Shown here piece after piece: positions 15,809 to 43,449 of a stretch of DNA of 64,000 nucleotides (position 1 is its first letter; every line of letters starts with the position of its first letter). The DNA lies in IMG/VR virus record IMGVR_UViG_3300028829_003504, positions 124,001-188,000 of that record. One strand, 5' to 3'. The translations under genes and the position numbers were made by a program. Below the pieces are notes generated by a model. The model was not told the DNA's origin. It was given only the letters and a program-made list of their open reading frames with translations, and ran no database searches.

Positions 15809-17215
15809 TTAAAGTTTATACCAGAGTTGCTCTGTGTTTTGATTTACAGTTTTGTTATCGCATGTTCGAACGATAACCCCAGTGTGAGGTACTCCTTTAA
15901 CTTTCTGTACAACTGCCATGGCACGCTGCTTTAAAGTCTTGGTGGACCCTACTTTTATCTCTACTATAGGTAGAGCTGATATACCCATTCGCTTGAACTG
16001 CTTTTGGATATTAATAAATCCAGCTCTAACAAAGCGTACGCCCTCAACATTGTCATCTATAAACATATCGAATGCGTAGAACTTAGCGCGTTGACCTATG
16101 TTAGCATCTTTTCGCCATGTAGATTCTTGCTTCTTTCTATCCTTTACAATTTCAGTAAAGGCATGTACGCTGGAAAGGAAGGATTTAGCCTTTTCGCATT
16201 TAATACGATTAGACTTTTTAACGCGCCGCCCATTTGTATCCAATAAGGTAACCCTATCAACAAGGTCCTGTGCTTGCCTAATAACAATCTTCTTTTCGGA
16301 TAAATATCTTGAAGCTTCTCGCTGCTCGGTATTTAAACCTACTACGCAATCTTTATGATCTGATAAGTCTTGGTCCAACCAGTCGCTAAACAAAGATTCC
16401 TTAGTAGCGCCGAGGCGACTCCCTGATAACTCCTTTACAGCTTTAGCATTTAATACGGTTTTACCTGTTACTACAACGTATGTTCCTACGTAAGGCATTA
16501 CCTCAGCACTAAGCTTAGAGGGTATAGATCCACAAGAACAGGCTTGCTTGAGAAAAGGTACGAACTTACTATTCTCTTTGAGAAAGGCTCCGTATAGTCT
16601 GTACCCTTCTCGGGCTGAGCTAGTTCTATATACTAGTAACGTATCACGGCCATCAAGGTTAGGTCCAACGAATACGCTCTTTGGATTGTATGTCTTAATT
16701 GCGTTTTCTATATTACTATCTTTTACAGAAAACATACTAGTATACTTAGCATAGTGCTTTTGTACATTAGACATATAGGCGGTTAAACCGTCAGGGCTAT
16801 TAGAAATGGCCTGCTGTATATGCTGTTTAAGTGCGAATAGTATATCCTCATAGGATACAATATTACCTCCGTATTCAGGTCTATCGCCATAAGCAAAGCA
16901 ACGCCAGAATGAGGACAACCTCGCATCTAAAGGTAGACCTAAGCCTGCCGCGTATAGTTCTGATATACGAACACATGACGTTAGAGAGAACTCCCTAGAT
17001 ACAGTTCTATACAGGACTTTAAGGGTTCTTAGATACAACCTTGGAACTAAGTGGCGAGAAGCTGGACCTCGCTGATCTTGAACAGGAGGTTTAATCTCAA
17101 AAGACATTGAAGTTTTAATCAAATCAGTGTCCGTTGTTTCCTCAAACACAGAGTTATGATATAGCTTTATTATGGCCGCTAAAGGTACGTCGGATAGGAC
17201 ATGGGTTAGAGACAT
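15809..17215 (-). CDS. Degenerate NAD-dependent-ligase-like adenylation-domain protein
   Basis: VGPNLDG (cf. EPKLDG), VVTGKTV (cf. VRGEV), FYAFD, TGVIVR (cf. DGVVIK), terminal LWYKL (cf. AYKF). Confidence 0.5.
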   Translation of the reverse strand: MSLTHVLSDVPLAAIIKLYHNSVFEETTDTDLIKTSMSFEIKPPVQDQRGPASRHLVPRLYLRTLKVLYRTVSREFSLTSCVRISELYAAGLGLPLDARLSSFWRCFAYGDRPEYGGNIVSYEDILFALKQHIQQAISNSPDGLTAYMSNVQKHYAKYTSMFSVKDSNIENAIKTYNPKSVFVGPNLDGRDTLLVYRTSSAREGYRLYGAFLKENSKFVPFLKQACSCGSIPSKLSAEVMPYVGTYVVVTGKTVLNAKAVKELSGSRLGATKESLFSDWLDQDLSDHKDCVVGLNTEQREASRYLSEKKIVIRQAQDLVDRVTLLDTNGRRVKKSNRIKCEKAKSFLSSVHAFTEIVKDRKKQESTWRKDANIGQRAKFYAFDMFIDDNVEGVRFVRAGFINIQKQFKRMGISALPIVEIKVGSTKTLKQRAMAVVQKVKGVPHTGVIVRTCDNKTVNQNTEQLWYKL

Positions 17216-30304: not shown

Positions 30305-31609
30305 CTATATATTTGATTTAGAGTAGAGGACAGCTTGATTGTCGTCTTCGGATTCTACTTTCTTGATGAATCCATACGCTTCGAACTTATCAAGTATGTA
30401 GGAACTATGCCAGTTGCTCATTATGTTTGATGCCTTTTCAAATTCATCACTAGTAAATGGGGATTCTAAATTATCTAAGGCTTTAGTCGCCGTTATAATA
30501 ATCTGAAACTCTCTCTTCTGATAGCCTTGAGGATCAATAAATTCTTCCCATACCTTTAAAGAAGTATAACCTCCACGTGGATCTTTTTCAGTAATGTAAT
30601 TAGCTATGTGAGACAGAACGGTGTACCCGTTAGCCATAAGCGTTTCGAGTTCATCGACAAGTAGTTCATCTTCGGTAAACTTACTTTCGTCAGTCTGCTT
30701 AGTACCGCGCCAACGATTATGCTGTTTGTAATCACCGTTATCTATTTCTTGGAAACGAAGACTCATGTAATGGAGAACCTCACTAAGTCCCGGCTTCGTG
30801 GGTTCAGGTATTGTCATAAACGTAATATGGTCAGCCCACTCTGTGCTTACTTTCCGGGCAGAAGGAGTGTAGGCTCTCAGAGTTGAGAGCAGATCAACTC
30901 CAGCACGTTCCCAGAGTTCGATGTCATCCTCGACGTCAATAACGTCTTCCATTAGGTAAACGGCTCTGGCTATATCCTGCTTGTTGTATGCCGCTGCGAC
31001 AAGTTCATCAAACAAATGCTGGAATGAATCATACGCTTTACTAAAGTCCGTAGTCTCGAACTCAACGCCAGCGACTTCTAATATACGGGTCCACTCTTTT
31101 ATCATAGCTATAATGGAATGAGGTACACTATCAGGATTAAGATTAAAGTCAGGTATAGGTGATTCATACACTACAGGCTGAGGTGTTTTAGTTAAGCGAG
31201 TAACAATGTTAACCGAATCTTTAACTACAAGTGGTTGGCATATAACAGATTCCTGAGGTGTGCTAAATAAAGAATCCTGTAACCTTGCTTGCATATCGTT
31301 ACAGAACTTAAGTCCTTTTGGAGATACATGGAATTCGTACTGATAAGGCCTATCTTTGAGAATACCATTGACCGTATAGTCGTTTAATTTAAGGTCAACC
31401 CGTTTAGCCTCCAGATTGTCAATGTGTATTTTACAGGAAGTAATGAGGCCTTCGCTATCAAGTCGTAGTAAAGATTCTAAAGCCTCTCGGTAAGGCGAGT
31501 CAAAGTCGGCTGCGTCTTTCTTATATACAAAGACTAGGTCTTCCAGTACAACGCCTCGAGGTGTTATTGCTAAAAATATTTGCGTATCTTTTAAAGTTAT
31601 ATTGTGCAT
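30305..31609 (-). CDS. Hypothetical protein
   Basis: 434 aa, AAGGA RBS. Confidence 0.75.
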   Translation of the reverse strand: MHNITLKDTQIFLAITPRGVVLEDLVFVYKKDAADFDSPYREALESLLRLDSEGLITSCKIHIDNLEAKRVDLKLNDYTVNGILKDRPYQYEFHVSPKGLKFCNDMQARLQDSLFSTPQESVICQPLVVKDSVNIVTRLTKTPQPVVYESPIPDFNLNPDSVPHSIIAMIKEWTRILEVAGVEFETTDFSKAYDSFQHLFDELVAAAYNKQDIARAVYLMEDVIDVEDDIELWERAGVDLLSTLRAYTPSARKVSTEWADHITFMTIPEPTKPGLSEVLHYMSLRFQEIDNGDYKQHNRWRGTKQTDESKFTEDELLVDELETLMANGYTVLSHIANYITEKDPRGGYTSLKVWEEFIDPQGYQKREFQIIITATKALDNLESPFTSDEFEKASNIMSNWHSSYILDKFEAYGFIKKVESEDDNQAVLYSKSNI

Positions 31610-31621
31610 ATCTGTTCCTTA

Positions 31622-32665
31622 TTAAGAATGGGTAATGATTTTTTGTTTTACGGCCTGTAGATAAAGTTGACCGCTAGCTAAGTTTTTGGCCTTGGCCTCA
31701 CACATGATATCGAATTCAGGTAAAAATGAAAGGGCCCAGCTATTCATTCTTTTATTACCGAACAACATACTGTGGGCACGTAGTTTAGTTTTTGGGAAAC
31801 CCATAGAGATAAGTTCGTCAAAGTTGAACATTCTATTTCTAGGTAATCCTAAAGTGTACTGCTCTTTACTATTTGAATAATGGATTGTAGGTCTTTTTCC
31901 ACGCCAACTGTCTTTTATGTACTTTAACCTCCCATCAGTAGATCTTATATATTCACCTTCACTGTTAATCCAATGGTGATGAATATCTAATACCAAGCCA
32001 ATTTTCTTATACAAAGGTAGCAGGTCATCTATACTGGCTCCAAACTCGTCGTTTTCTAAAGTAATAACTCTACGGGCTTCAGGTGACAGTCTGCTATAGG
32101 TCCGTTTAAACTCAGGTATTCCACCCCGACCAGATAGATGCACATTGACCTTCATGTCCAACTTCTTCTTTGCAAAACCTAAATATTTACAAATGTCTAC
32201 ATGATGCTCAAATTCCAATAGGGACGATGATACTACTTCAGGTTTATCGGAAGCTAGAACCGTAAACTGACCTGGATGGAAAGATAACTTAACGTTCAGT
32301 CTACGTGCAAGGTCCCCTACAGGTTTAAGATTATCGGATAGATACTTCTGTACATCGGGTTTATCATAGAACCAAGACCACGTCCTGTGTGTTGCGCCTG
32401 GACATATACTTGAACCTAGGCGCAACATACGTAGTTGTTCTGGGTACTCAGATAACTTGCGTACTAAGTTACGTATGGCTTTACAGTTGTTTTGCATAAT
32501 CTCATATAGACGGTCCTCTGCAATACTCTTGTTTTCATTTAACCATTTTATAGTAGTGCTCTGGAACCTGTAAGGTTTTACCCAACGCTCGGATTCTGCT
32601 TTAGATGAAGCTTGTGCTTCTACATCGGGAGGTAACTCGTACACGCACGCAAATCCAATCTTCAT
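31622..32665 (-). CDS. uvsE: UV damage endonuclease UvsE/UVDE
   Basis: KIGFAC, RMLRLGS, LSFHPGQFTVLAS, ITLENDE, LVLDIHHHW, HYS, LRAHS, DIMCEAKAKNLA. Confidence 0.95.
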   Translation of the reverse strand: MKIGFACVYELPPDVEAQASSKAESERWVKPYRFQSTTIKWLNENKSIAEDRLYEIMQNNCKAIRNLVRKLSEYPEQLRMLRLGSSICPGATHRTWSWFYDKPDVQKYLSDNLKPVGDLARRLNVKLSFHPGQFTVLASDKPEVVSSSLLEFEHHVDICKYLGFAKKKLDMKVNVHLSGRGGIPEFKRTYSRLSPEARRVITLENDEFGASIDDLLPLYKKIGLVLDIHHHWINSEGEYIRSTDGRLKYIKDSWRGKRPTIHYSNSKEQYTLGLPRNRMFNFDELISMGFPKTKLRAHSMLFGNKRMNSWALSFLPEFDIMCEAKAKNLASGQLYLQAVKQKIITHS

Positions 32666-32705
32666 AATAGATATCCTTGTATATAGATTTAATCGCTAGC
32701 TAGGT

Positions 32706-33281
32706 TTAGCTGTAGCGTGGCTTTTTCTTTTTTAGCTTCTTTCTCTTAGGACCCTTCCTTAAATCCTTAACCAACATCTTAGATACCATCTTAAATACGG
32801 CTAGGCTTTCTTCCTCGCCTAGACTCGCAATAGATTCTTGTAACAAGGAACTAACATCTAGTCTATGTTTATGGAGGTCGACCCATTCTCCGTTTTCATC
32901 GCTCCCATAAGAATGTATGCGATGCTTGTACGCAATGTAATGACCGCCGACAGTAGGGTCTATGTCTATAATTACGCGGTCTTCTTCTAGGCTTAAATGG
33001 AAAGCCATAGTTAGTCCTTCAACATCCGTTGTGAATTCCATAGAATCGTCGCCGCACACTGAATCGCTACTGGGGAACAATTCAATTACAGATCGAATAC
33101 TAACTATCAGGTTAGTCCATATAGGCTTAAAATCTCCGGCCACAATAAAAGTATTACGGGTTTTGTGTATCTTACCTAAACTCAACGTATTAATTTTTAC
33201 GGTATCCTTTAAGGAAGTTTCAGGGTTGCTTAATACGGCAAGGATGCTCGTTATTGAAGTTTCTAAGTTTGACGATTTCAT
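32706..33281 (-). CDS. Hypothetical protein with basic tail
   Basis: 191 aa. Confidence 0.7.
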   Translation of the reverse strand: MKSSNLETSITSILAVLSNPETSLKDTVKINTLSLGKIHKTRNTFIVAGDFKPIWTNLIVSIRSVIELFPSSDSVCGDDSMEFTTDVEGLTMAFHLSLEEDRVIIDIDPTVGGHYIAYKHRIHSYGSDENGEWVDLHKHRLDVSSLLQESIASLGEEESLAVFKMVSKMLVKDLRKGPKRKKLKKKKPRYS

Positions 33282-33293
33282 TTTGTTTTCCTT

Positions 33294-33761
33294 TTAAGAA
33301 TTGATTGACTCTTTAGTAATTATGTCAACAGGTGCAAGTTCGTACTTAACAACACAATCGGTACAGGCATGAATGTGGTTATTAACTTTGCCGTTTAACT
33401 TACCTGCGAAGTGATATAGATTTTCATAATCTTTCAGATTTTCAAAGTTGTAGCCACAGCAGTCACAAGCTAGAGGCTCAGTCGAATTACCATTAGGTAT
33501 AATTACTTCATCTATACAAACGGCAATCGTATTACCTTGAACGTATGCCGCACTAGTTCCTAAGTCCGCTCCAAACGCCTGAACGAAGATGTGCATAGGC
33601 ACGCGATAGAAACCATCGTCGTCAAATGCGAATTCGTCAGTACGGACAGGCGAATCATCTATAAGCTCGACGCCTCTTTTATTAGGTTTGAATCTAACGA
33701 AAGTATTCATGTTTAGCGCAACGTAGGTTCTACTACCTGATACATAAGAGTTGATTTGCAT
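33294..33761 (-). CDS. Hypothetical protein with C-terminal Zn ribbon
   Basis: CDCC...CTDC. Confidence 0.7.
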   Translation of the reverse strand: MQINSYVSGSRTYVALNMNTFVRFKPNKRGVELIDDSPVRTDEFAFDDDGFYRVPMHIFVQAFGADLGTSAAYVQGNTIAVCIDEVIIPNGNSTEPLACDCCGYNFENLKDYENLYHFAGKLNGKVNNHIHACTDCVVKYELAPVDIITKESINS

Positions 33762-33827
33762 TGTTATCTCCGATAATTAAAGGGCCGCACTTTGATACAT
33801 AGGGCTGCGGAATACCCAAGGTAAATA

Positions 33828-34070
33828 TTAGATAAAAGGCTGTGCTGGAATACCTGCGTACTTTGATATAGCGTCGATAATTTCCATGTCGTCGCAGTCA
33901 ACCACAAGAAGTTTAGGTGGTGCTCCTTGAGGACGAATCTCAATTACAATGACTTCAATAGAAAGTTGCCCTTTCTTGAAACCATATCTTGAAACCGATG
34001 CGTTAGCGCCACATGTCCGCAGTAGCATAGTTAAACTTGAAGCTGGGTTATCGCCTAAACATATTAACAT
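33828..34070 (-). CDS. Small hypothetical protein
   Basis: Start MLICLG (AGGAG RBS). Confidence 0.65.
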   Translation of the reverse strand: MLICLGDNPASSLTMLLRTCGANASVSRYGFKKGQLSIEVIVIEIRPQGAPPKLLVVDCDDMEIIDAISKYAGIPAQPFI

Positions 34071-34154
34071 TGTTTTCTCCTGGGTGAATAAAAAATGATG
34101 GGTGAATATAAGATGTTCCATTTCACCCATCGAACATCGCAGCAGTCTCAAGTG

Positions 34155-34892
34155 CTACGAAAGTTTAACTGACTCAATTACTTCTTTACCGATAGTGCCA
34201 CTGTTTGCATCAGCCGCTATATCTTTGTGTAGGCGTAGATCCTTTTCGCCGAATGCGAAGATAACTTGAAACTCTTTACGCATGTCCTTTTGTTTCCATT
34301 CGATGTCCAACTCGGAAGGAAAGACAATCTCGGTCTTAGATAAAGAAGGGTAAACCCTAAGCTGTTCGTTTTCGCTTCTAATGTTAGTCGGTTGATTGAA
34401 GTCTACCTTTCTAACAGCGATCAAGTAGACGTTTTGCTGTGCGGCTAACGGTGCGAGTTTCTTGTGGATGAACTCGCACGTAACAGCTCCAGCCATGTTG
34501 TATCTTCCGCAGATACCTACATCAAAGATTGACTTGTCATCATCTTTGATGAAAGTGTTTACGAAAGTCGCACGGCTTGCACCGTAGCCATAAACTTCCA
34601 TTTGTGTAACGTCACCTTTTCTATACACGCTCATAGTGTCTGTGCCTTTGGACCAGAACGGGCGATACTCGCGGTTCGATTCTAGGTCGGCCGAGTAGAT
34701 TCCGTAATGCGCGTAACCATTAGCAGACCCTACAAGCAATACTAAAGCGTTCGTCAGAGGAATAATGTGGCGCGCCACGTTGCGGCCACTATACTCGTCT
34801 TCATCTTTAACGTGAATTGTTATATCTGGGTAGTTACCGCAGTTCGCCCACCAATTGATTGACAACCTAGTAGGTTCGATTAATTTGCTCAT
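34155..34892 (-). CDS. Hypothetical protein
   Basis: Start MSKLIEP, ATGA coupling to the upstream gene. Confidence 0.75.
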   Translation of the reverse strand: MSKLIEPTRLSINWWANCGNYPDITIHVKDEDEYSGRNVARHIIPLTNALVLLVGSANGYAHYGIYSADLESNREYRPFWSKGTDTMSVYRKGDVTQMEVYGYGASRATFVNTFIKDDDKSIFDVGICGRYNMAGAVTCEFIHKKLAPLAAQQNVYLIAVRKVDFNQPTNIRSENEQLRVYPSLSKTEIVFPSELDIEWKQKDMRKEFQVIFAFGEKDLRLHKDIAADANSGTIGKEVIESVKLS

Positions 34893-35212
34893 TCTTTTTC
34901 TCTCCAAATAGTTAAGTTTGTGGAATCATCAGGTTGACTTTTAAAATTGTGATCTTGGATAGTCGTAGATAACATCTGCAACCCTAGAATACTTTTACCA
35001 GCATAAGGTATTATACCTGTCACGCGTCTGCCTAGTGGAAGACCCAGTACCTCATCCCAACTAGAATAACCTGCAGACTTCGCAAAGGTGTCTGCGGGGT
35101 GCTCGATTTTTACCTCATTAAATGCGTGTTGTTCAGATAGCTTCAATGCGTGGCGAAGTGCAGGAGTCTTATCTAAATCCAACGAGTAATCCAGATTCTG
35201 TGTAAACTTCAT
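34889..35212 (-). CDS. Hypothetical protein
   Basis: 107 aa; FAKSAGYSSWDEV motif. Confidence 0.65.
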   Translation of the reverse strand: MKFTQNLDYSLDLDKTPALRHALKLSEQHAFNEVKIEHPADTFAKSAGYSSWDEVLGLPLGRRVTGIIPYAGKSILGLQMLSTTIQDHNFKSQPDDSTNLTIWREKE

Positions 35213-35223
35213 TATTTAATTCC

Positions 35224-35577
35224 TTATTTGAATAAGCTTTCGGCCAAGTCAGGTTCGTCTGAGTTTTTAACTGCCCAGATAATTTGAGCTTTCAACGCTT
35301 CAAAGAATTCGTTTTTCTTAGTGTGCCATTCACGGCGATCACTATCGTAGTCTTTAGGTGAAAAGAACTCTCTTACAATTAAAGCTTCAAGCATCGAAAC
35401 TTGTGCGGTCTCCAGGGCTTGAGTAGTTTCCCATATATGTATATAAGCCTTGCTGTTGACATAATCATGTAAGCCTATTGACATACCGCCTACGTCAACA
35501 ATTAAACGTTGCATTTCCATAATGGCCGGAACAAGGTGAGGTTGTTGGTTAAGAAAGTTCTTAGGCAATTCTTTCAT
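35224..35577 (-). CDS. Hypothetical protein
   Basis: 117 aa, GGAG RBS. Confidence 0.7.
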   Translation of the reverse strand: MKELPKNFLNQQPHLVPAIMEMQRLIVDVGGMSIGLHDYVNSKAYIHIWETTQALETAQVSMLEALIVREFFSPKDYDSDRREWHTKKNEFFEALKAQIIWAVKNSDEPDLAESLFK

Positions 35578-35666
35578 TAGTTAATCTCCGTTGCTTTACC
35601 ACGTTGCGTCCGCAGATTGGTAAATTGATTGGGCTCTTTTAGCAGTAGTCATTTGGGTAATACCTT

Positions 35667-35876
35667 TTATAGTTGTTTTACTTTAACTAGGGAGTAACAG
35701 TCTTTAAATTTAGCTAGGCGTTCGGAAGACCACGCTTCTTGGTAGTCATCACGGAGTTCTCCATTCAAACAGACGTACTCACTACCATCGGTGAATCTAA
35801 ACATCTTCTTTGGGTATAGACCGCAATCAACGGCGACTTTATATACGCCGTAGTCCTCAAGTATAAGTTGCGACAT
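35667..35876 (-). CDS. Small hypothetical protein
   Basis: 69 aa, AAGGA RBS, first gene after a promoter. Confidence 0.7.
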   Translation of the reverse strand: MSQLILEDYGVYKVAVDCGLYPKKMFRFTDGSEYVCLNGELRDDYQEAWSSERLAKFKDCYSLVKVKQL

Positions 35877-36140
35877 ATTAACATTCCTTTAGTTTAAATC
35901 AATATAGTTGTCTTGCTCTTTATGTCTTAGTATAACACATCGTAGCTATCAGTAATATAGCATAATAAGACGGCATTAGGCAGTGAAATACAGAGCATAC
36001 AGCTAGCTAGAGAGCGCCTGAGGCTGGTGGTTTTTAGCTTCAATATGAAGTACTAGAAAGGACGAAATGTCTTTAAAAGGGGTAGTATGTAGTCATCCTT
36101 CTCTCGCATACCCCACCCATTGTAAGCTGATCAATACCTT

Positions 36141-37739
36141 CTAGTATAGGTCAGCTAGGTCTATAGTATTTAGGCGTTCGGCATCATGTATAGTTTTATA
36201 CCAAGTCGTAGCAATAAAATTTTCTCCGAGTAACAGGTTCTTGTATTGAGACTTAGAAATAATTTCCTGTACGTTTTCTCTAAAGTCGGTAATCAATCTA
36301 TATCGAGGTCCATCTTTATATAAGAAACCCCAAATAGTCAATCTATTCAAGATAGACGATATGTGATGAGGTTTACGTCCAATCCGTTTTCCTAAGTCTT
36401 CATAAGTAATAAGGTTAGAGTTTAAGTCGTCGATGTGAGGTAAGACCAAAGTAGCTAAACCAAAGTAGTTGTTATTTATAGGAGTAAGGCCTATTAGGTA
36501 TCCTAGGTATTTTAAATTCTGTGTGTTCATAGTATTTTCTTTATCTAAGTTGATTAATTTACATAATGCTTCTTTCATACTTCTTAAGCTCTGGGCGACA
36601 CCAAGACTATCGTTTTTCAAATTCGCTTCAATACCTTTATTAATTAAACTAAGTAAGACTTCAGGTGCTACGGCTTCTTCAACTTCTGTGCGTTGATCTT
36701 GAAGTTTTTGTCTGTCCAACTCAAGTGCCTTTAGTTCCAGGCGGGCTTCTACAGGACTGCGGCCTCCAAGGTCGTACCTTATACCGTCTGAGTAAGACAA
36801 GGTCGTCTTATATTGAGGACATAAGTTATACATTGTTATAAAATCTTTTAGTACTATACGAGGTCTTAGCACATAAAGGTAGTCTAAGGCAGAGTCTACA
36901 TTATCAGATTGTCTATTACCGAGACCGTAGAAAACCCTAGCAGCTATGTATAATTCTACGCAAGGTAATACTAGTGGGAACTTGGCACTTTGCTCTATGG
37001 CAATTAGACCCTGGACTATTTCAATATCTCGGTTTGCCTGTCTATTAAACTCAGCAGATATAGTACTTATTTTTCCGTCACACTTACTTTTAAATATTTC
37101 GTACAGAGTGACTGGGTCACATTCAGTTAGATTAACTAAGTCGATGTGGTCAGGTATAAGATTCTTCTCTTTTAAATAGTCAGTGATTTCACTTAGGCTA
37201 GGGTCACAATTATAAGCACATTCTTCTAGGGAACTTCCATAATCATAGGCAGCCATCAGCCAGTTGTACATGGCGTCATGGCCTTGAGACTCGATTTCTT
37301 TTTTCTGTTCGTCACTTTGGATTAAATTTAAGTTGTTCCCTTGTCGATCCTTAAGGTAAGACAACAACACGGATGTCACTATTTCACTTTCTTGGAAAGG
37401 TCCTACGACATAAGTATGGGTGTGATATTCCTCATACTTAGGAATTTCGCCGTCTATGCCTTGTGCGTTAAAATCAGGACAATGGTTATGGGTATATACA
37501 GTATGTGCAACTGCCGGTGCTGGAAAATCTTTTGAGGAGCTATACTTCTCAAGGGCCTGTAGGAACAGACTGTGTTTGACTTTAGACGTACAGCCACTGT
37601 CGTCGTCAATTGCCAGGTCGTTGAATGTTATTTCTAAAAATGGACCTGCAGGCTTTACTGATATGATATTATGTGCTTCTGACCATTGTGAAGAAAGCAC
37701 CTTTGAGTGAGATAGTATTTCTTTAATTGAGTTTAACAT
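36141..37739 (-). CDS. Hypothetical protein with probable C-terminal winged HTH
   Basis: ITYEDLGKRIGRKPHHISSILNRLTIWGFLYKDGPRYRL. Confidence 0.75.
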   Translation of the reverse strand: MLNSIKEILSHSKVLSSQWSEAHNIISVKPAGPFLEITFNDLAIDDDSGCTSKVKHSLFLQALEKYSSSKDFPAPAVAHTVYTHNHCPDFNAQGIDGEIPKYEEYHTHTYVVGPFQESEIVTSVLLSYLKDRQGNNLNLIQSDEQKKEIESQGHDAMYNWLMAAYDYGSSLEECAYNCDPSLSEITDYLKEKNLIPDHIDLVNLTECDPVTLYEIFKSKCDGKISTISAEFNRQANRDIEIVQGLIAIEQSAKFPLVLPCVELYIAARVFYGLGNRQSDNVDSALDYLYVLRPRIVLKDFITMYNLCPQYKTTLSYSDGIRYDLGGRSPVEARLELKALELDRQKLQDQRTEVEEAVAPEVLLSLINKGIEANLKNDSLGVAQSLRSMKEALCKLINLDKENTMNTQNLKYLGYLIGLTPINNNYFGLATLVLPHIDDLNSNLITYEDLGKRIGRKPHHISSILNRLTIWGFLYKDGPRYRLITDFRENVQEIISKSQYKNLLLGENFIATTWYKTIHDAERLNTIDLADLY

Positions 37740-37813
37740 AGTCGTTCTCTCTACTTAGTTTAAGTTTATGGGTGGTACGCCAACCTGAAGCCAGCATTCA
37801 AAGTATGTTTAGT

Positions 37814-38800
37814 TTATTTGGTTTTCTTTTTGGCTACTACTTTCTTTTTGGCTACTACTTTCTTTTTGGCTTTAGTAGTGGATTTTACTTTCTTAGATTC
37901 GGTAGGGCGTTCTGTTTTATCTCCGTCGCCCGGTACCGTTGTTGCTTTAGCTTTCTTGAAGTTCTCAAGCTTGCTTAGGCTAACGGCTATGATTAGACCT
38001 GATCCAGGAAGTTTAACTTGCATATTTTTACCCATCATACCCTGGCTGATAGCCGAATCTTTTGAGTCAATACCTGCGCTCTCTAGGAGTCCTAAAACTT
38101 CAAGGGCTGCTGTGTCAAAATCTAAGGCACGTTGCTCTGCTACAATCTCTTTAGCAGATTTCAAACGAGCTTTAATTTTATCAAGTGATTTGGTGTGTAC
38201 GCTAATAGCTTTAACTGCGGCTACCATGTGCTTTTCCATTTGTTCAGATAAGGTACCTTTAGGTAAAGCGTATAATATAACGTTAGACTTAGCAGTGGCT
38301 TTCTTCTGCTCTTTAACAGGCGCACATCGGCGCGTCAGGTAAGCATAAGAATCACCAGCTTTGTTTTTCTTAGCGTCGAATTCTTCGTACTTACCTTTAC
38401 CTATAGTGAACACGGCTGTAGGTGAAGTTGGGAATTTACTACCCAACAAAGCTGAGATAGATAATGAAGTATGTTCACCAAATAACATTTCTTTAGGTAA
38501 GACAAGTTTGAAGCTACCGTCTTTCATCTTAGTGGTCATTGAAGATTTTATCTCACGTGGCGCTTCAATTAAACCTGACTCAAGTAACGAATCGACTATC
38601 TGCTTACGGTTACGAGAATGAATTTTAGTAATAGTTACTGATTCTCTAGTGACACGACAAGGTGCCAACTTATTAGATAAGGCTGCAACAATCTTAGTTT
38701 GCAGTAATTCGACTTTACCACGGTTTAATAAGCCGTCTCTGTTCAAGTAAGGGTTAGTAAAGTTAGAAGTAAGGGTAATTAATGTGTTTGAGTTTTTCAT
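37814..38800 (-). CDS. Hypothetical basic protein with Lys-rich tail
   Basis: 328 aa; AKKKVV repeats. Confidence 0.75.
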   Translation of the reverse strand: MKNSNTLITLTSNFTNPYLNRDGLLNRGKVELLQTKIVAALSNKLAPCRVTRESVTITKIHSRNRKQIVDSLLESGLIEAPREIKSSMTTKMKDGSFKLVLPKEMLFGEHTSLSISALLGSKFPTSPTAVFTIGKGKYEEFDAKKNKAGDSYAYLTRRCAPVKEQKKATAKSNVILYALPKGTLSEQMEKHMVAAVKAISVHTKSLDKIKARLKSAKEIVAEQRALDFDTAALEVLGLLESAGIDSKDSAISQGMMGKNMQVKLPGSGLIIAVSLSKLENFKKAKATTVPGDGDKTERPTESKKVKSTTKAKKKVVAKKKVVAKKKTK

Positions 38801-38866
38801 AATAACATTCCTTTAAGTATTTAAGTTGTTTCGTTCGCTTTGGACTTATACATAATATAGTAAATT

Positions 38867-38889
38867 AAGAGGGTAGGTCGTACCCTCTT
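38867..38889 (-). terminator. Hairpin, possible terminator
   Basis: AAGAGGGTA-GGTCG-TACCCTCTT; weak U tract. Confidence 0.45.
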
Positions 38890-38911
38890 CGGGGACAATT
38901 GTAATATTGAA

Positions 38912-39295
38912 CTAATTACCCTTGAACGTTTGTTTGCAATTCAGGCACTCGTAGTATTCAAAATACGAATCGCATGAAGTCATCTTAGCGGGGCCTGAAC
39001 ATGACGAACAAGAGCCTGCCCAGTCATCACCTTCGTCATCGCTAATAATAGGTTCACCCGTCTGTTTGCGCCATATTTGAAACACGTAATCGAACACGGC
39101 ATCAATTTTTCTGAATTCGCGGAACTTAGTTGACTCAGAACCGTAGCTCGTCATCTCCAAACCGCATACACATAACGGATCGACACACGCTCCAGGCGTA
39201 TGGCTGCGAGGGTCATTAGGAACTAATTCCTCAAAAGGACCCAGCTTACTTGAGTCTTTACCGCATGAACATTTCCAATCAAAAATATCAGTCAT
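38912..39295 (-). CDS. Small Zn-ribbon protein
   Basis: CSCG, CVCG, CSSC, CLNC. Confidence 0.75.
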   Translation of the reverse strand: MTDIFDWKCSCGKDSSKLGPFEELVPNDPRSHTPGACVDPLCVCGLEMTSYGSESTKFREFRKIDAVFDYVFQIWRKQTGEPIISDDEGDDWAGSCSSCSGPAKMTSCDSYFEYYECLNCKQTFKGN

Positions 39296-39340
39296 AGTTT
39301 TTCCTTATTCATATAAGTTTGCTTGCTTCGTTATGGACTC

Positions 39341-39393
39341 ATTATAGCAGGTTAATACCTTTGATTATACTCTTAAATGAGCCGACATTAGGC
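39341..39393 (-). promoter_or_regulatory. TATAAT promoter with upstream GCCTA(A/G)TGCCG-like box (representative copy)
   Basis: Six copies with -10 at 7098, 20723, 20896, 25317, 35929, 39341 and plus-strand TAGGC 47-49 nt further on. Confidence 0.7.
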
Positions 39394-39418
39394 GACGAAA
39401 GATATATACCGCAGACAT

Positions 39419-39450
39419 AAAAAAACCACTGTACTCGAAAGCAAGTGGTT
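39419..39450 (-). terminator. Intrinsic terminator closing the ncRNA cassette
   Basis: AACCACT-TGCTTTCGAGTAC-AGTGGTT followed by TTTTT on the minus strand. Confidence 0.75.
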
Positions 39451-39456
39451 AGTGTT

Positions 39457-39569
39457 AGAATACATTGGGATAAAAAAGAACTGAGTATATTTCAACTCAG
39501 TCCAAAATATCAAAAACTGTTTAACTGATTGGGTTGATAGTTGTCTCACTTCCTATCCCAATGTATTCT
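39457..39569 (-). ncRNA. Structured RNA A (16-bp perfect closing stem, two inner hairpins)
   Basis: AGAATACATTGGGATA / TATCCCAATGTATTCT; inner ACTGAGT/ACTCAGT and TATCAA/TTGATA. Confidence 0.6.
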
Positions 39570-39576
39570 TAATAGG

Positions 39577-39647
39577 TTGAATACCGCATGAGGCAAAAAC
39601 GCGGCTAAACGATTGCTGGTAAATAAGGAGCCTCATGCTGTATTCAA
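39577..39647 (-). ncRNA. Structured RNA B (8+9 bp stem, 35-nt loop)
   Basis: TTGAATAC-x-GCATGAGGC / GCCTCATGC-x-GTATTCAA. Confidence 0.6.
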
Positions 39648-39653
39648 ATGGTC

Positions 39654-39706
39654 GCAACTCTAACTCCTTAAGAGGAACCCCATTCAACCGGAGGAGTTAG
39701 AGTTGC
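39654..39706 (-). ncRNA. Structured RNA C (15-bp perfect stem, 23-nt loop)
   Basis: GCAACTCTAACTCCT / AGGAGTTAGAGTTGC. Confidence 0.6.
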
Positions 39707-39741
39707 TTTTCTACTGTTCGAGTTACGAAGTCAAACAGCAA

Positions 39742-39822
39742 GAAAGTTTCAGGGTTATCTTACGGAAGGGAGAGCCTTGCTCACCTAACAGCCTTATCCT
39801 AACAAAGTTAAATGAAACTTTC
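39742..39822 (-). ncRNA. Structured RNA D (10-bp closing stem)
   Basis: GAAAGTTTCA / TGAAACTTTC; interior has TGTTAGG twice and AAGGC twice on the minus strand. Confidence 0.5.
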
Positions 39823-39863
39823 AGAGGCATGTCTAAATAGAACATGTAAGGAGATTCGTTTAA

Positions 39864-40156
39864 TATACTGTGGGTATTTCCCTAGTAGAAGAACTCAAGC
39901 TGTACCTTAGATACCACACGTTGGCCTTAGTGTTTGTGCTGGGTCTTTGAGTTTACATGCAAAGTGACCTGCCACACAGGTAAATAGTACAGCTCGGTAA
40001 TACGTTTGCGTTTAGTACGTATCGACATTCCTTTCCGATATTCTTACGTTGTGACATAGATACCGTGCGATAGGTAAATAGCCTTTCGTGCAATCGGAGT
40101 TCGCTTCTTCTAGACCCTTAGCGTCGAGTCCTGTTTAAGAAAATACACAAAGTATA
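39864..40156 (-). ncRNA. Structured RNA E (~290 nt, multibranched)
   Basis: Nested stems TATACT..GTATTT/AAATAC..AGTATA, CTAG.AGAAG.AACTC/GAGTT..CTTCT.CTAG, AGCTGTAC/GTACAGCT, ATACGT/ACGTAT. Confidence 0.6.
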
Positions 40157-40162
40157 CTAGTA

Positions 40163-40302
40163 TACTTTACTTAGTGCTACCCACTCAATGAGCTAAGATT
40201 AGGGCCTTGCGTGTGAACGGCGCGAACCTCTGTAGCTCTCTAAACAATGCCTCAACGCAACTTGGCATGGACAGATTAGAGTGAGTACCACTAAAGAAAG
40301 TA
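40163..40302 (-). ncRNA. Structured RNA F (~140 nt, long interrupted closing stem)
   Basis: Minus strand TACTTT-CT-TTAGTG-G-TACTCACTC pairs with GAGTGGGTA-G-CACTAA-GT-AAAGTA (a G-U pair favours minus); inner GAGCTA/TAGCTC and TGCC/GGCA. Confidence 0.6.
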
Positions 40303-40323
40303 GGATAGAGTCCTAGCGAGAAA

Positions 40324-40399
40324 TGGTGGGTCGTGCAAGATTCGAACTTGCGGCAAATTGGTTAAAAGCCAACTGCTCTACCAACTGAGCTAACGACCC
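40324..40399 (-). tRNA. tRNA-Lys(UUU)
   Basis: GGGTCGTTAGCTCAGTTGGTAGAGCAGTTGGCTTTTAACCAATTTGCCGCAAGTTCGAATCTTGCACGACCCACCA; 76 nt cloverleaf with encoded CCA. Confidence 0.97.
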
Positions 40400-40515
40400 A
40401 TAGTACAAACTATATATTAGTGTTTACAGTTTGTATTTTACATAAATACTGGAGGTATACGTACACCAGAATTAAACGTATTATATAGGCGTTGAACGTG
40501 TACGCGTTCTAGCCA

Positions 40516-40618
40516 TGTCCCTGACAGGAATTCGGGTTCTACCTGTAACTTACTATTTGAATTGAGGGTATCGCACCTCGCAGAAACAGCAATGCTCTAA
40601 GCTTTGAGCTATAGGAAC
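40516..40618 (-). ncRNA. tRNA-like RNA G (extended anticodon arm, enlarged T-loop, no CCA)
   Basis: Acceptor GTTCCT/AGGGAC, TA, D-arm GCTC-AAAGCTTA-GAGC, arm TTGCTGTTT/AAATAGTAA capped by GAGG/CCTC, T-stem ACAGG/CCTGT with 13-nt loop. Confidence 0.6.
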
Positions 40619-40644
40619 TTTTCGTTTAATCGCGTATAACAAAA

Positions 40645-40735
40645 TGAACAAGGCTGGAATCGATACCAGCAATGCCAGAATAGGGCTTACCGTAACACGA
40701 GCCTAACTGTTGGTTTATCTTAACTCTACTTGCTC
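40645..40735 (-). ncRNA. tRNA-like RNA H (acceptor and T arm intact, rest remodelled)
   Basis: Acceptor GAGCAAG/CTTGTTC then A; T-arm GCTGG-TATCGATT-CCAGC; starts about 11 nt after an AAACTGTAAA motif. Confidence 0.6.
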
Positions 40736-40746
40736 ACGTATTAATG

Positions 40747-40756
40747 TTTACAGTTT
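40747..40756 (-). promoter_or_regulatory. AAACTGTAAA promoter motif (representative copy)
   Basis: (A)AACTGTAAA core also at about 13840, 14406, 15843, 20829, 40423, 43485, 45353, 52079, 59585, 59608 (minus) and CTGTAAA near 56565, 62574, 62962, 63994 (plus), always oriented with the downstream gene. Confidence 0.7.
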
Positions 40757-40775
40757 TGTATTAAGTAGGATTTAC

Positions 40776-42296
40776 TTAATCTTCTTCGTCCGCAACTAGG
40801 TCACCTTTACCTGCACAGATAAGAGCGAAATTCTTGAGAGCTTTACCATTCGCCAATTGCTTCTTACACCAGAAGCGTATATCAACAGGCTTAACACCAA
40901 GTAAGTCGCAAGTTTCTTTTACCTGTCGCTTGTTACCTAACACCAGTGCTTTGAATGATAACCAAGAACACTTCTTAGCTCCGTGTAAGGGACAATCTTC
41001 GTGGAATTTCATATTACCACGAGTACCGCCTACTACGCCTAACATCTTCAAGAAGTTCCAAGTATCAAACACTGGATCTAGGCCTCTAGCCACACCATCA
41101 GCATCACGAATCCAGATACGTGCAAATGTATCTTGATACTGTAGCCCGCCAAGTTTGTTCTTGATAACTTTCAAGTTGATGAAACGATATTCGTCGTTTC
41201 CTTCGTGCTCAACAGACTTCTCATCCATAGTAGGACCTTTACCCCAACCTGAAGGTAGAGCACGGCTGGTAGATTTTATTCTACAGTCAGAGAAGAATTT
41301 CAACGCTTCACCTCCCGGCTCATACTCAGGATTACCAAACATAGTCGCAGGCTTCTGTCGTAATTGATTAACCCCAAATACTGTCATGCGTTTCTTCTTC
41401 ATAGAACCTTTAATGCGTTTAAGTTCTTTGGAGAACATCCGCGCTTGCAGGGCCATTGCATTGCTACCTTCGTCCGTATCTTCTTGCCTAGGTAACATAG
41501 CAGGATAGGAATCTAGTAGCGCGATTGCTTGCATCATACCATCTGCGGCAGGCACTTTAATTTTGTTATGCTTAGATAAGTACTTAGGGTCATATACAGA
41601 TTTGAATCGCTTGAGTAATTTCTTATCATGAGGGAACAAATAGTAATACTCTTTGCCTAATTTAACTTTATCAGGTAGTATTCTTTTTAGTCGATTATAG
41701 AATTCGAAAAATTCCTCGCCTCCATCAGTGGAGATATAATCAACGATCGGAGGTGTAATTTCCTCACCTGTATCGGGGTCTCTCTCTCCGAAGATTTGGC
41801 TCAACGTTTGCTTAACGCCTTGTGATTTTAGAATACTCTCAATGTAGTCAGGGCTACCTGAACCTTCGTAATCCCAGTAGCTGGCTTTACCCTCAAAGCC
41901 TTGTTTAATTATAGCTGACATTATTGTCATAGCTATTGTTGTCTTAGCGGATTGTTCACCACCAAAGATAGTGTACCAGCCACCTGATACGATACCACCG
42001 CCTATTAATAGATCAAGTGATACTAAACCTGTATGTAAACGAGGTTCGTCTGGGTCAAAAGCTGTACCTGCAAGACCCATCTTCTTCTTAACGTCTGTAA
42101 TGGATTCATCTAACATGTTTTCCAATAGAGATTTCGTTAAGGCGACTGCCTCTGAATGAGCGTTATCTGCAACTAAGGTAGCTTTATCGGAATTCTTGGC
42201 TTTCTTAGTTTTAGGAACATCAGCAACCTCAAGAGCCTTTTTGGCTCCTTTAGTTACTTTGGCTGATTTAGATCTAGTCGCTGTTTTAGTTGCCAT
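40776..42296 (-). CDS. recA: RecA/UvsX-like recombinase
   Basis: TGLVSLDLLIGGGI, Walker A GGEQSAKTT, DYE, LLDSY, ALQARMFS, VNQLR, MFGNPEYEPGGEALKFFSD, KNKLG. Confidence 0.93.
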   Translation of the reverse strand: MATKTATRSKSAKVTKGAKKALEVADVPKTKKAKNSDKATLVADNAHSEAVALTKSLLENMLDESITDVKKKMGLAGTAFDPDEPRLHTGLVSLDLLIGGGIVSGGWYTIFGGEQSAKTTIAMTIMSAIIKQGFEGKASYWDYEGSGSPDYIESILKSQGVKQTLSQIFGERDPDTGEEITPPIVDYISTDGGEEFFEFYNRLKRILPDKVKLGKEYYYLFPHDKKLLKRFKSVYDPKYLSKHNKIKVPAADGMMQAIALLDSYPAMLPRQEDTDEGSNAMALQARMFSKELKRIKGSMKKKRMTVFGVNQLRQKPATMFGNPEYEPGGEALKFFSDCRIKSTSRALPSGWGKGPTMDEKSVEHEGNDEYRFINLKVIKNKLGGLQYQDTFARIWIRDADGVARGLDPVFDTWNFLKMLGVVGGTRGNMKFHEDCPLHGAKKCSWLSFKALVLGNKRQVKETCDLLGVKPVDIRFWCKKQLANGKALKNFALICAGKGDLVADEED

Positions 42297-42300
42297 CTAA

Positions 42301-43449
<1,149 letters not shown>

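What the first reader, a model, noticed from the sequence alone, without database searches (positions are those of the whole stretch)
39864..40156. ~290-nt RNA E carries the same internal-loop motif twice
Seen on the minus strand: CUAUUUACC paired with GGUAUCUA(A/U)G occurs in two separate arms (plus coordinates 39979-39987 with 39906-39915, and 40073-40081 with 40055-40064). Each gives UACC/GGUA, a UU/UC mismatch, two pairs and a bulge. UAUUUACC recurs in the loop of element B (39618-39625). Inference: a multivalent protein-binding (sponge) RNA.
Basis: partly seen in the sequence, partly recalled or inferred. Interest (0 to 1): 0.68.

Follow-up and report, generated by a model that had tools for sequence, protein, structure and literature searches.

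The report
Orphan phage noncoding domain, repeated motif
A marine jumbo phage carries, behind its only tRNA gene, a roughly 300-base noncoding stretch in which one split sequence motif really does occur twice, but no relative has this stretch and no RNA data exist, so nothing supports calling it a protein sponge.

Summary
On the minus strand, CUAUUUACC(U) lies at 40081-40072 and 39987-39978, and GGUAUCUA(U/A)G at 40064-55 and 39915-06. UAUUUACC occurs a third time at 39625-18, in a hairpin loop. Arm 1 pairs robustly (UACC/GGUA probability 0.9, closed by an 11-bp stem). Arm 2 is only a near-optimal alternative fold (probability 0.05, 1.5 kcal/mol above the minimum). As a chance event the split repeat is unlikely inside this locus (about 0.006), but unremarkable genome-wide.

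The stretch lies in the largest ORF-free gap (1,480 bp) of a 262-kb marine jumbo phage. It follows a phage promoter-like motif and tRNA-Lys and precedes two terminators, in a hypervariable island after recA. I found no Rfam family and no homolog. The closest relative (87% RecA identity) keeps the element just upstream of RNA E but lacks RNA E. Independent samples hold identical copies only. No RNA data exist.

Most likely this is a lineage-specific part of a tRNA-linked noncoding transcript, and the duplicated module is a sequence-specific recognition element with an unknown partner. Chance or a neutral relic remains a serious rival. The sponge idea is untested. Interest is low to moderate.

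The parts
40776..42296 (-). RecA/UvsX-like recombinase gene (506 aa). It is the last conserved core gene before the variable island.
   Evidence: NCBIfam RecA 7.5e-27. Homologs reach up to 87% identity over the full query. Synteny with L076 and L077 is conserved upstream only.
40745..40756 (-). Phage promoter-like motif AAACTGTAAACA (P1), directly after the recA stop codon.
   Evidence: The motif CTGTAAA[CT]A occurs 18 times in the genome, 14 of them on the minus strand and several shortly before an ATG. P1 and P2 are 94% alike over 18 nt (D2).
40421..40432 (-). Second copy of the promoter-like motif (P2), about 20 nt upstream of the tRNA.
   Evidence: A similar motif precedes the tRNAs in L004 and L076.
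40324..40399 (-). tRNA-Lys(UUU), the only tRNA in the 262-kb genome.
   Evidence: Rfam 75.4 bits; ARAGORN.
40164..40264 (-). Conserved element after the tRNA. It is shared with the closest relative and ends exactly where RNA E begins.
   Evidence: 78% identity to L076 10612-10669, plus shared 14-mer and 16-mer.
40149..40168 (.). Perfect 20-bp palindrome AAAGTATACTAGTATACTTT at the 5' edge of RNA E. It overlaps a weak sigma70-like -10 hexamer.
   Evidence: (I10). The promoter scan found no more sites than its own shuffles.
39861..40159 (-). RNA E: a predicted closed multi-branch domain. The outer stem has about 22 bp, an inner stem is AGAAGAA/UUCUUCU, and the branches include arm 1 and arm 2.
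   Evidence: MFE -77.5 kcal/mol, z -2.0 to -2.3. The same fold appears in the 909-nt context. However, 7% of random 293-nt genome segments reach z <= -2, and local 150-nt windows give z -0.5 to +1.4.
40053..40083 (-). Motif copy 2 (arm 2): GGC-UAUU-UACC-[UAUCGCAC]-GGUA-UCUAU-GUC.
   Evidence: Sequence. Pair probability 0.05; isolated hairpin -4.2 to -4.8 kcal/mol; enforcing it costs +1.5 kcal/mol.
39896..39996 (-). Motif copy 1 (arm 1): an 11-bp stem, an internal loop AUU/UCUAA, the UACC/GGUA helix, and a 63-nt branched cap.
   Evidence: Pair probabilities 0.84-1.0; isolated arm -28.5 kcal/mol.
39618..39625 (-). Third UAUUUACC, single-stranded in the loop of the 18-bp hairpin 39577-39647. The nearby GGUAUUC belongs to that stem and is not a motif half.
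   Evidence: (D4, I1).
39746..39794 (-). Neighbouring conserved hairpin GGUGAGC-[stem]-CUCUCC-N5-GUAAGAUAA-[stem']. It is not part of RNA E.
   Evidence: Found in L122, L121 and L130. Three of six stem pairs change on both sides and 91.7% of cells are paired.
39478..39503 (-). Intrinsic terminator-like hairpin followed by a U run (first terminator of the noncoding unit).
   Evidence: Similar copies occur elsewhere in the genome.
39410..39448 (-). Second terminator-like hairpin followed by a U run.
   Evidence: 95% identical over 39 nt to the start of contig L088, from a relative whose 127-aa ORF homolog is 67% identical.
38912..39295 (-). First gene after the noncoding unit: an orphan Cys-rich 127-aa protein with several CxC and CxxC pairs.
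   Evidence: Translation. Only 2 homologs among 5.8 billion proteins. No family assignment: NCBIfam and PADLOC gave nothing, and PHROGs gave one marginal hit to an unknown-function family (phrog_29481, E 8.5e-05).

Best explanation
RNA E is a lineage-specific noncoding domain inside the long 3' trailer of a phage tRNA-Lys transcription unit. The order is: phage promoter-like motif, tRNA-Lys, a conserved ~100-nt element, RNA E, further hairpins, then two terminators. The unit lies in a fast-turnover accessory island downstream of recA in a marine jumbo phage.

Shown: the locus is the largest ORF-free stretch of the genome. Its layout is that of a noncoding unit on the coding strand. The split repeat exists. 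Arm 1 folds robustly in silico. An adjacent hairpin is conserved with compensatory changes in related phages.

Inferred: the domain is transcribed with the tRNA and released or stabilised by its ~22-bp closing stem. The twice-repeated module (CUAUUUACCU ... The partner could be a protein (binding or endonucleolytic processing) or another RNA, and it is unknown. Two sites suggest at most bivalent binding, not a titrating sponge.
For: - The 1,480-bp gap is the largest ORF-free region of the 261,788-bp genome, about twice the next largest.
- Promoter-like motifs that recur through the genome, mostly on the minus strand, lie upstream. tRNA-Lys follows, and two terminator-like hairpins lie downstream.
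- RNA E folds identically alone and within 909 nt, with closing-stem probability about 1.0, at z -2.0 to -2.3.
- The motif halves are 19/20 identical, while flanks and loops are near random.
- The spacing between halves is 8 versus 63 nt. That fits an RNA helix with a variable cap, not a dimeric DNA site.
- The expected chance count in the gap is about 0.006. A triple 8-mer arose in 51/2000 shuffles.
- A hairpin 70 nt downstream is conserved in three other phage contigs with covariation, so RNA-level elements do exist in this island.
Against: - No homolog of RNA E was found anywhere, so there is no covariation or conservation evidence.
- The closest relative keeps the flanking element but lacks RNA E.
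- Copies from other samples are 100% identical and carry no information.
- Local 150-nt windows inside RNA E show no excess structure.
- 7% of random genome segments reach the same z-score, and the boundaries were chosen to fit the closing stem.
- Arm 2 is not the favoured fold.
- No RNA data exist.
- Genome-wide, such a split repeat is expected about once per strand by chance.
Confidence: 0.4

Rival explanations
1. There is no function. The stretch is spacer or debris in a rapidly rearranging tRNA island (decayed or recombined sequence). The repeat is then a chance coincidence or a neutral relic of a small internal duplication.
For: - RNA E is absent from the closest relative, and the whole island is absent from L077.
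- No homologs were found anywhere.
- Split repeats of this kind arise about once per strand per genome in shuffles.
- The z-score is within the 7% tail of random segments.
- Local windows are unstructured.
- The 3' flanks of the two copies are 7/12 identical, and a 22-nt stretch is 73% alike, as a decaying duplication would leave.
Against: - The contrast is sharp: 19/20 identical in the halves against near-random loops and 5' flanks.
- The expected chance count in this locus is about 0.006.
- A third exact 8-mer lies in a hairpin loop (p about 0.025).
- Phage genomes rarely keep a 1.5-kb noncoding block, and this is the largest in the genome.
- Neighbouring elements are demonstrably conserved.
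Confidence: 0.3
2. One reading: a multivalent decoy (sponge) RNA that titrates an RNA-binding protein through the repeated internal loops.
For: - Identical sequence is presented twice on a helix with different caps, plus a third half-site in a loop.
- The adjacent ORFs have composition typical of nucleic-acid binders: a Cys-rich 127-aa protein and a 328-aa protein with a Lys-rich tail.
Against: - There are only two full sites.
- Arm 2 is thermodynamically marginal.
- GGA and ANGGA motifs are not enriched.
- The neighbouring proteins match no RNA-binding family.
- The motif was not found in relatives or in the collection scans, apart from chance hits.
Confidence: 0.1
3. The modules are RNA-RNA tertiary or quaternary contact sites, resembling an 11-nt tetraloop receptor. 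They would help a large tRNA-island RNA fold or self-assemble, as A-minor and kissing contacts do in ROOL and GOLLD.
For: - Arm 1 has UAU opposite UAAG with a G-U closing pair, which is the core of the CCUAAG/UAUGG receptor.
- Large phage RNAs near tRNA islands that assemble through such contacts are known.
Against: - The receptor's two C-G pairs are replaced by U opposite UC.
- Arm 2 reads UAUG, so it has no A-A platform.
- No GNRA hairpin with a stem of 3 bp or more exists anywhere in 40775-39380.
- Neither the window nor 14 related loci give a GOLLD or ROOL match.
Confidence: 0.08
4. The features act as DNA: operator or iteron sites of a replication origin or regulatory region beside recA.
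For: - A perfect 20-bp palindrome lies at the edge of the domain.
- Short words are repeated in the region.
- The region is adjacent to a recombination gene.
Against: - The spacing between the halves is 8 versus 63 bp, which does not fit a fixed dimer site.
- There is no AT-rich dip and no GC-skew turn at this position.
- The motif words are not enriched genome-wide: 5 and 11 copies against roughly 3 and 10 expected from base composition by my own hand estimate.
Confidence: 0.05

Closest known systems
Stable small RNAs co-transcribed with phage tRNA clusters (T4 species 1 and 2 / RNA C and D; from my own knowledge, not tested here)
   Same: Noncoding RNA encoded next to phage tRNA genes, presumably cut out of a common precursor, with function still unknown.
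   Different: The T4 RNAs are about 120-140 nt and are known experimentally. Here nothing is known about expression, there is only one tRNA, and no sequence relation was tested or is expected.
GOLLD and ROOL large ornate RNAs of phages and prophages (bioRxiv 10.1101/2024.12.08.627333)
   Same: Large noncoding region encoded in a phage beside a tRNA, in a marine metagenome, with unknown function.
   Different: There is no covariance-model match in the window or in relatives. There is no family of homologs and no demonstrated ornate conserved structure. RNA E alone is about 300 nt.
11-nt GAAA tetraloop receptor, CCUAAG/UAUGG (bioRxiv 10.1101/2024.03.11.584472)
   Same: Arm 1 carries UAU opposite UAAG with a G-U closing pair in an asymmetric internal loop.
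   Different: The C-G pairs are missing. One strand has an extra nucleotide. Arm 2 has UAUG instead of UAAG. There is no GNRA partner loop in cis.
Protein-sponge RNAs such as CsrB/RsmZ (from my own knowledge)
   Same: A short sequence repeated within one structured RNA.
   Different: Those RNAs carry many (about 8-20) GGA motifs in hairpin loops. Here there are 2-3 copies of an unrelated motif, and GGA is not enriched.
Bacterial and phage Y RNAs (PMC4201824; abstract only, seen)
   Same: Structured noncoding RNA that binds a specific protein through a conserved helix with a bulge or internal loop.
   Different: RNA E has no tRNA-like module. No Ro60/Rsr gene was recognised among the neighbours. 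There is no Rfam Y RNA match.

Membership tests
Any Rfam 15 family (4227 models) | Covariance-model score at the gathering threshold, or at least E <= 10 | tested here: not met
   Only tRNA passed. The other hits in 39200-40800 were miRNA-model noise outside RNA E.
GOLLD / ROOL | Match to the family covariance model | tested here: not met
   No hit in the window or in 14 related loci.
GOLLD / ROOL | Encoded in a phage or prophage next to tRNA genes | tested here: met
   The stretch lies downstream of tRNA-Lys in a jumbo phage. This is context only and does not define membership.
11-nt GAAA tetraloop receptor | CCUAAG/UAUGG sequence with two C-G pairs, a U-A pair, an A-A platform and a G-U closing pair | tested here: not met
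   Arm 1 has UCUAAG opposite UAUU, without the C-G pairs and with one extra nucleotide. Arm 2 has UCUAUG.
11-nt GAAA tetraloop receptor | A GAAA (GNRA) tetraloop partner | tested here: not met
   No GNRA hairpin with a stem of 3 bp or more in 40775-39380. A partner in trans cannot be excluded.
Protein-sponge RNA (CsrB/RsmZ type) | Many repeated binding motifs (GGA) exposed in loops | tested here: not met
GGA 10 observed against 10.0 expected in the trailer; ANGGA 3 against 2.9.
Protein-sponge RNA (any) | Demonstrated binding and titration of a protein | not testable with these tools
   Needs pull-down or EMSA and abundance measurements.
Retron msr-msd RNA | Adjacent reverse-transcriptase gene | tested here: not met
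   The downstream ORFs (127, 328, 532 aa) give no hit to a reverse transcriptase or any annotated family in NCBIfam, PHROGs or PADLOC; the only hit is one marginal PHROG match of unknown function for the 127-aa ORF.
tRNA / tRNA-like element | Cloverleaf or T-arm and acceptor detected by a tRNA model | tested here: not met
   Rfam at E <= 10, and ARAGORN allowing introns up to 400 nt, find only tRNA-Lys.
Conserved structured ncRNA (generic) | Homologs with compensatory base changes | tested here: inconclusive
   No homolog was found, so covariation cannot be scored.

The most novel reading that the evidence does not exclude
RNA E is the first seen member of an unrecognised kind of phage tRNA-island RNA. 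Its duplicated, sequence-specific internal-loop module would recruit or sequester a particular RNA-binding protein, either a host factor or one of the adjacent orphan proteins (Cys-rich 127 aa, Lys-tailed 328 aa), during infection.
Probability: 0.1. Interest if true: 0.6.

Novelty: new member of a known kind. Interest (0 to 1): 0.3.

Why it matters
Phage tRNA islands are known to hold enigmatic noncoding RNAs, such as the T4 stable RNAs, GOLLD and ROOL, whose functions are still open. If RNA E is a stable RNA with a defined protein or RNA partner, it would add a small, tractable example from marine jumbo phages, which are little studied at the RNA level. As the evidence stands, it is a single-genome candidate with a real but only moderately improbable repeat. 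Its main practical value is to flag this 1.5-kb locus, and the conserved hairpin and post-tRNA element beside it, for transcript mapping.

Tried and rejected
- **Rfam**, at gathering and E <= 10 thresholds, on the window and on 14 related loci: tRNAs only.
- **blastn** against INPHARED phages, near and distant modes: only the tRNA matched.
- **Own genome**: no second copy of RNA E and no antisense target. Only terminator-like repeats matched.
- **Exact-motif scans**:
  - IMG/VR gave 65 hits, none related by blastn. That number is in the range I estimated by hand for chance.
  - JGI metagenomes gave 22 hits, of which one is an identical copy of the same phage from another sample.
  - GTDB genomes gave 5 hits, none related.
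- **Relatives via RecA** and via the 127-aa ORF:
  - The island is not syntenic in these relatives.
  - Contigs break at the tRNA or at the terminator.
  - Smith-Waterman alignment of RNA E against the gene-free gaps of seven related loci scored no better than shuffles.
  - A helix-plus-loop descriptor found only background hits.
  - Whole-record blast of five IMG/VR relatives matched only tRNA.
  - ENA and JGI records could not be searched whole.
- **Reads**: only the source marine sample holds the sequence, as contigs, with no variants and no RNA.
- **Ideas rejected**:
  - Retron: no reverse transcriptase.
  - tRNA remnant or intron-containing tRNA.
  - CsrA-type sponge.
  - Tetraloop-receptor pair in cis.
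  - Small ORF: only a 46-aa TTG frame.
  - Pseudoknot at the third copy: its GGUAUUC is part of an 18-bp stem.
  - Promoter at window 16,746 resembling the palindrome: it lies inside a 468-aa ORF.
  - MITE: no other copy in the genome.
- **Neighbouring proteins**: the protein atlas gave nothing usable.
- **Considered but not formally tested**: a CRISPR-repeat mimic. I judged it unlikely because the two halves are 8 and 63 nt apart.

Full report
**Setting.** The window is bases 124,001-188,000 of a 261,788-bp IMG/VR virus record with direct terminal repeats, so it is a jumbo phage. The only sequencing runs that hold this stretch are from one marine metagenome sample. Nearly all genes in the window lie on the minus strand. 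The finding lies in a 1,480-bp stretch (39296-40775) with no ORF of 60 aa or more on either strand. This is the largest such gap in the genome, about twice the next one.

Read on the minus strand, the order is:
- a RecA/UvsX-like gene (40776-42296);
- a promoter-like word AAACTGTAAACA at 40756-40745;
- about 300 nt of noncoding sequence;
- the same word again at 40432-40421;
- tRNA-Lys(UUU) at 40399-40324, the only tRNA of the phage;
- about 900 nt of noncoding sequence that includes RNA E;
- two terminator-like hairpins with U runs (39503-39478 and 39448-39410);
- an orphan Cys-rich 127-aa ORF.

The word CTGTAAA[CT]A occurs 18 times in the genome, 14 of them on the minus strand and several shortly before an ATG. 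It is therefore a plausible phage promoter.

**The observation.**
CTATTTACCT occurs at 40081-40072 and 39987-39978 (10/10 identical). GGTATCTATG and GGTATCTAAG occur at 40064-40055 and 39915-39906 (9/10 identical). TATTTACC occurs a third time at 39625-39618.
- In arm 1 the UACC/GGUA helix has pair probability about 0.9. It sits on an 11-bp stem (39996-39986 with 39896-39906) across an AUU/UCUAA internal loop, capped by a branched 63-nt insert. The same picture holds whether 293 nt or 909 nt are folded.
- In arm 2 the proposed hairpin has probability only 0.05. The minimum-energy fold pairs GGUAUC with AAUAUCGG instead. Its base has only three pairs.
- The third 8-mer lies unpaired in the 35-nt loop of an 18-bp hairpin. 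The GGUAUUC that follows belongs to that hairpin's stem and is not a motif half.

**Chance.**
- In 20 block-shuffled genomes, a split 9+8-nt repeat with unequal gaps and a 4-bp complement arises at about one locus per strand per 262 kb. The repeat would therefore not stand out in a whole-genome trawl. In the 1.48-kb gap on one strand, however, the expected count is about 0.006.
- Three copies of any 8-mer within 500 nt of the trailer occurred in 51 of 2000 shuffles.
- The halves are 19/20 identical, while the adjoining loop and flanks are 2/7, 3/7, 3/12 and 7/12 identical. That contrast is the best internal argument that these particular letters are constrained.
- The unequal spacing of the halves (8 versus 63 nt) fits an RNA helix with a variable cap better than a DNA site for a dimer.

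**Is RNA E a structured RNA?**
- The domain (40159-39861) is closed by about 22 pairs and folds the same way alone and in context. Its z-score is -2.0 to -2.3.
- However, 7% of random 293-nt segments of the same strand reach z <= -2, and the boundaries were chosen on the closing stem.
- Sliding 150-nt windows inside RNA E give z between -0.5 and +1.4. The tRNA and the hairpins at 39780-39430 give -3.5 to -6.3.
- The thermodynamic support is therefore modest.
- No RNA run holds the sequence. The source contigs show no variants, and assemblies break at the tRNA.

**Homologs.**
- None was found for RNA E. Rfam gives only the tRNA, and INPHARED blastn gives only the tRNA.
- Exact-motif scans of IMG/VR, JGI metagenomes and GTDB genomes returned unrelated hits, plus one 100%-identical copy of the same phage from a different JGI sample.
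- Through RecA I reached a 311-kb ENA contig (L076; 87% RecA identity over the full query, 91% in the tblastn alignment), a JGI contig (L077, 83%) and several contigs at about 64%. Gene order is conserved upstream of recA, but not downstream.
- L077 lacks the whole island (roughly window 31,600-40,775).
- L076 has other genes after recA (including a sigma factor), three tRNA-Lys genes, and the same ~100-nt element that follows the tRNA in the window (40264-40164). It then diverges exactly where RNA E begins.
- Local alignment of RNA E against the gene-free gaps of seven related loci scored no better than shuffles. A helix-plus-loop descriptor found only background.
What can be said is that RNA E is lineage-specific within a hypervariable island.

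**Context that does show RNA-level conservation.** About 70 nt downstream of RNA E lies a hairpin (39794-39746; GGUGAGC, a 6-bp stem, then CUCUCC-N5-GUAAGAUAA in the loop). It recurs in L122 directly after recA, in L121, and in an unrelated-looking 75-kb IMG/VR contig (L130). Three of its six stem pairs change on both sides, and 91.7% of cells are paired, against 12-50% when the partner columns are slid. The stretch after recA (40758-40593) is also 80% identical to L076. The island therefore carries modular noncoding elements, some conserved. RNA E is not one of the conserved ones.

**Interpretation.**
- *Best reading (confidence about 0.4).* RNA E is part of the tRNA-Lys transcription unit's trailer. 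The duplicated module is a sequence-specific recognition element on a UACC/GGUA helix, with an unknown partner.
- *No function (about 0.3).* Chance, or a neutral relic of a small duplication in fast-turnover DNA. The 22-nt, 73% similarity extending 3' of the second halves fits a duplication.
There are two sites and one half-site, no identified protein, no GGA enrichment, and the neighbours are orphans with no usable structural or family match. Their Cys-rich and Lys-rich composition is at best suggestive.
- *Receptor-like RNA-RNA contact (about 0.08).* Arm 1's UAU/UAAG core recalls the CCUAAG/UAUGG receptor. But the C-G pairs are missing, arm 2 lacks the A-A step, and no GNRA hairpin exists in the locus.
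- *DNA-level reading (about 0.05).* It is disfavoured by the unequal spacing of the halves and by flat base composition and skew.

**Comparison with known systems.** By position, this resembles noncoding RNAs of phage tRNA islands. Examples are the T4 stable RNAs (from my own knowledge) and GOLLD and ROOL, which are often near tRNA islands, one GOLLD lying downstream of tRNA-Met in a marine sample. It is not a member of any described family: every tested defining feature failed (see the membership table).

**Verdict.** The repeat is real and moderately unlikely by chance in this locus. The claim of the same internal-loop structure twice holds for sequence but only partly for structure. The sponge inference is untested. 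I rate this a single-genome candidate of low to moderate interest.

Noticed in passing
window 39746-39794 (minus); L122 1649-1699; L121 2939-3004; L130 10257-10322; degenerate copy at window 40705-40745: Small conserved hairpin: GGUGA(U)GC, a 6-bp stem, then the loop CUCUCC-N5-GUAARAUAA, followed by CAAC. It is found in four phage contigs. The stem varies as CAAGG/CCCUG, CAGGG/CCCUG, CUAAG/CUUAG and CUAGG/CCUAG. In L130 it lies between a CTGTAAA promoter-like word and the next gene's start, so it may be a 5' leader element. It has no Rfam match.
   Followed up: partly
window 40164-40264 (minus); L076 10573-10672: About 100 nt after tRNA-Lys are conserved (78%, with shared 14- and 16-mers) in the closest relative, also after a tRNA-Lys. 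A UUGCGU/ACGCAA stem is present in both. This is possibly a small RNA or a processing element. Its similarity to L076 ends exactly at the RNA E boundary.
   Followed up: partly
window 40593-40758 (minus); L076 7575-7742: The noncoding stretch right after recA is 80% identical between the two phages, although it precedes different things: the tRNA here and a sigma-factor gene in L076.
   Followed up: no
L076 10740-11100: Besides three tRNA-Lys(UUU) genes, the closest relative carries tRNA-like genes with insertions. One scores 44 bits as tRNA over 117 nt, and ARAGORN calls a 41-nt intron in it. Another has an acceptor stem and T arm around an insert of about 80 nt. That insert contains UUUACC-GUAA-GGUAC and AGUUCUUC, two 8-mers that also occur in the same order in the 3' part of RNA E. 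The resemblance is weak.
   Followed up: partly
L120 2510-2534: GGTATAATCGCACTACTATTTACCC contains the three blocks of the window's copy-2 hairpin (CTATTTACC, ATCGCAC, GGTAT) in a different order. It lies in a gene-free gap downstream of recA in a relative with 64% RecA identity. The region shows no excess fold stability (z -0.09). Unexplained.
   Followed up: partly
window 40149-40168: Perfect 20-bp palindrome AAAGTATACTAGTATACTTT at the 5' edge of RNA E. A near copy at window 16,730-16,747 lies inside a 468-aa ORF.
   Followed up: partly
whole genome (G000); examples at window 40421-40432, 40745-40756, 13846, 45359, 59615: The recurrent word (A)AACTGTAAA[CT]A occurs 18 times, mostly on the coding strand and several times shortly before an ATG. 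It resembles a phage-specific (late-type) promoter.
   Followed up: partly
window 31,600-40,775: The block downstream of recA is an accessory island. It is absent from L077 and replaced by other genes in L076. Its ORFs (127, 328, 532 and 250 aa, among others) are orphans. The 127-aa protein is Cys-rich, and the 328-aa protein ends in a Lys-rich tail.
   Followed up: partly
window 42,440-42,656 (genome 166,440-166,656); genome 245,121-245,467 and 143,344-143,433: Coding regions with dense short tandem or direct repeats turned up in the repeat census. One lies in the 382-aa ORF next to recA.
   Followed up: no
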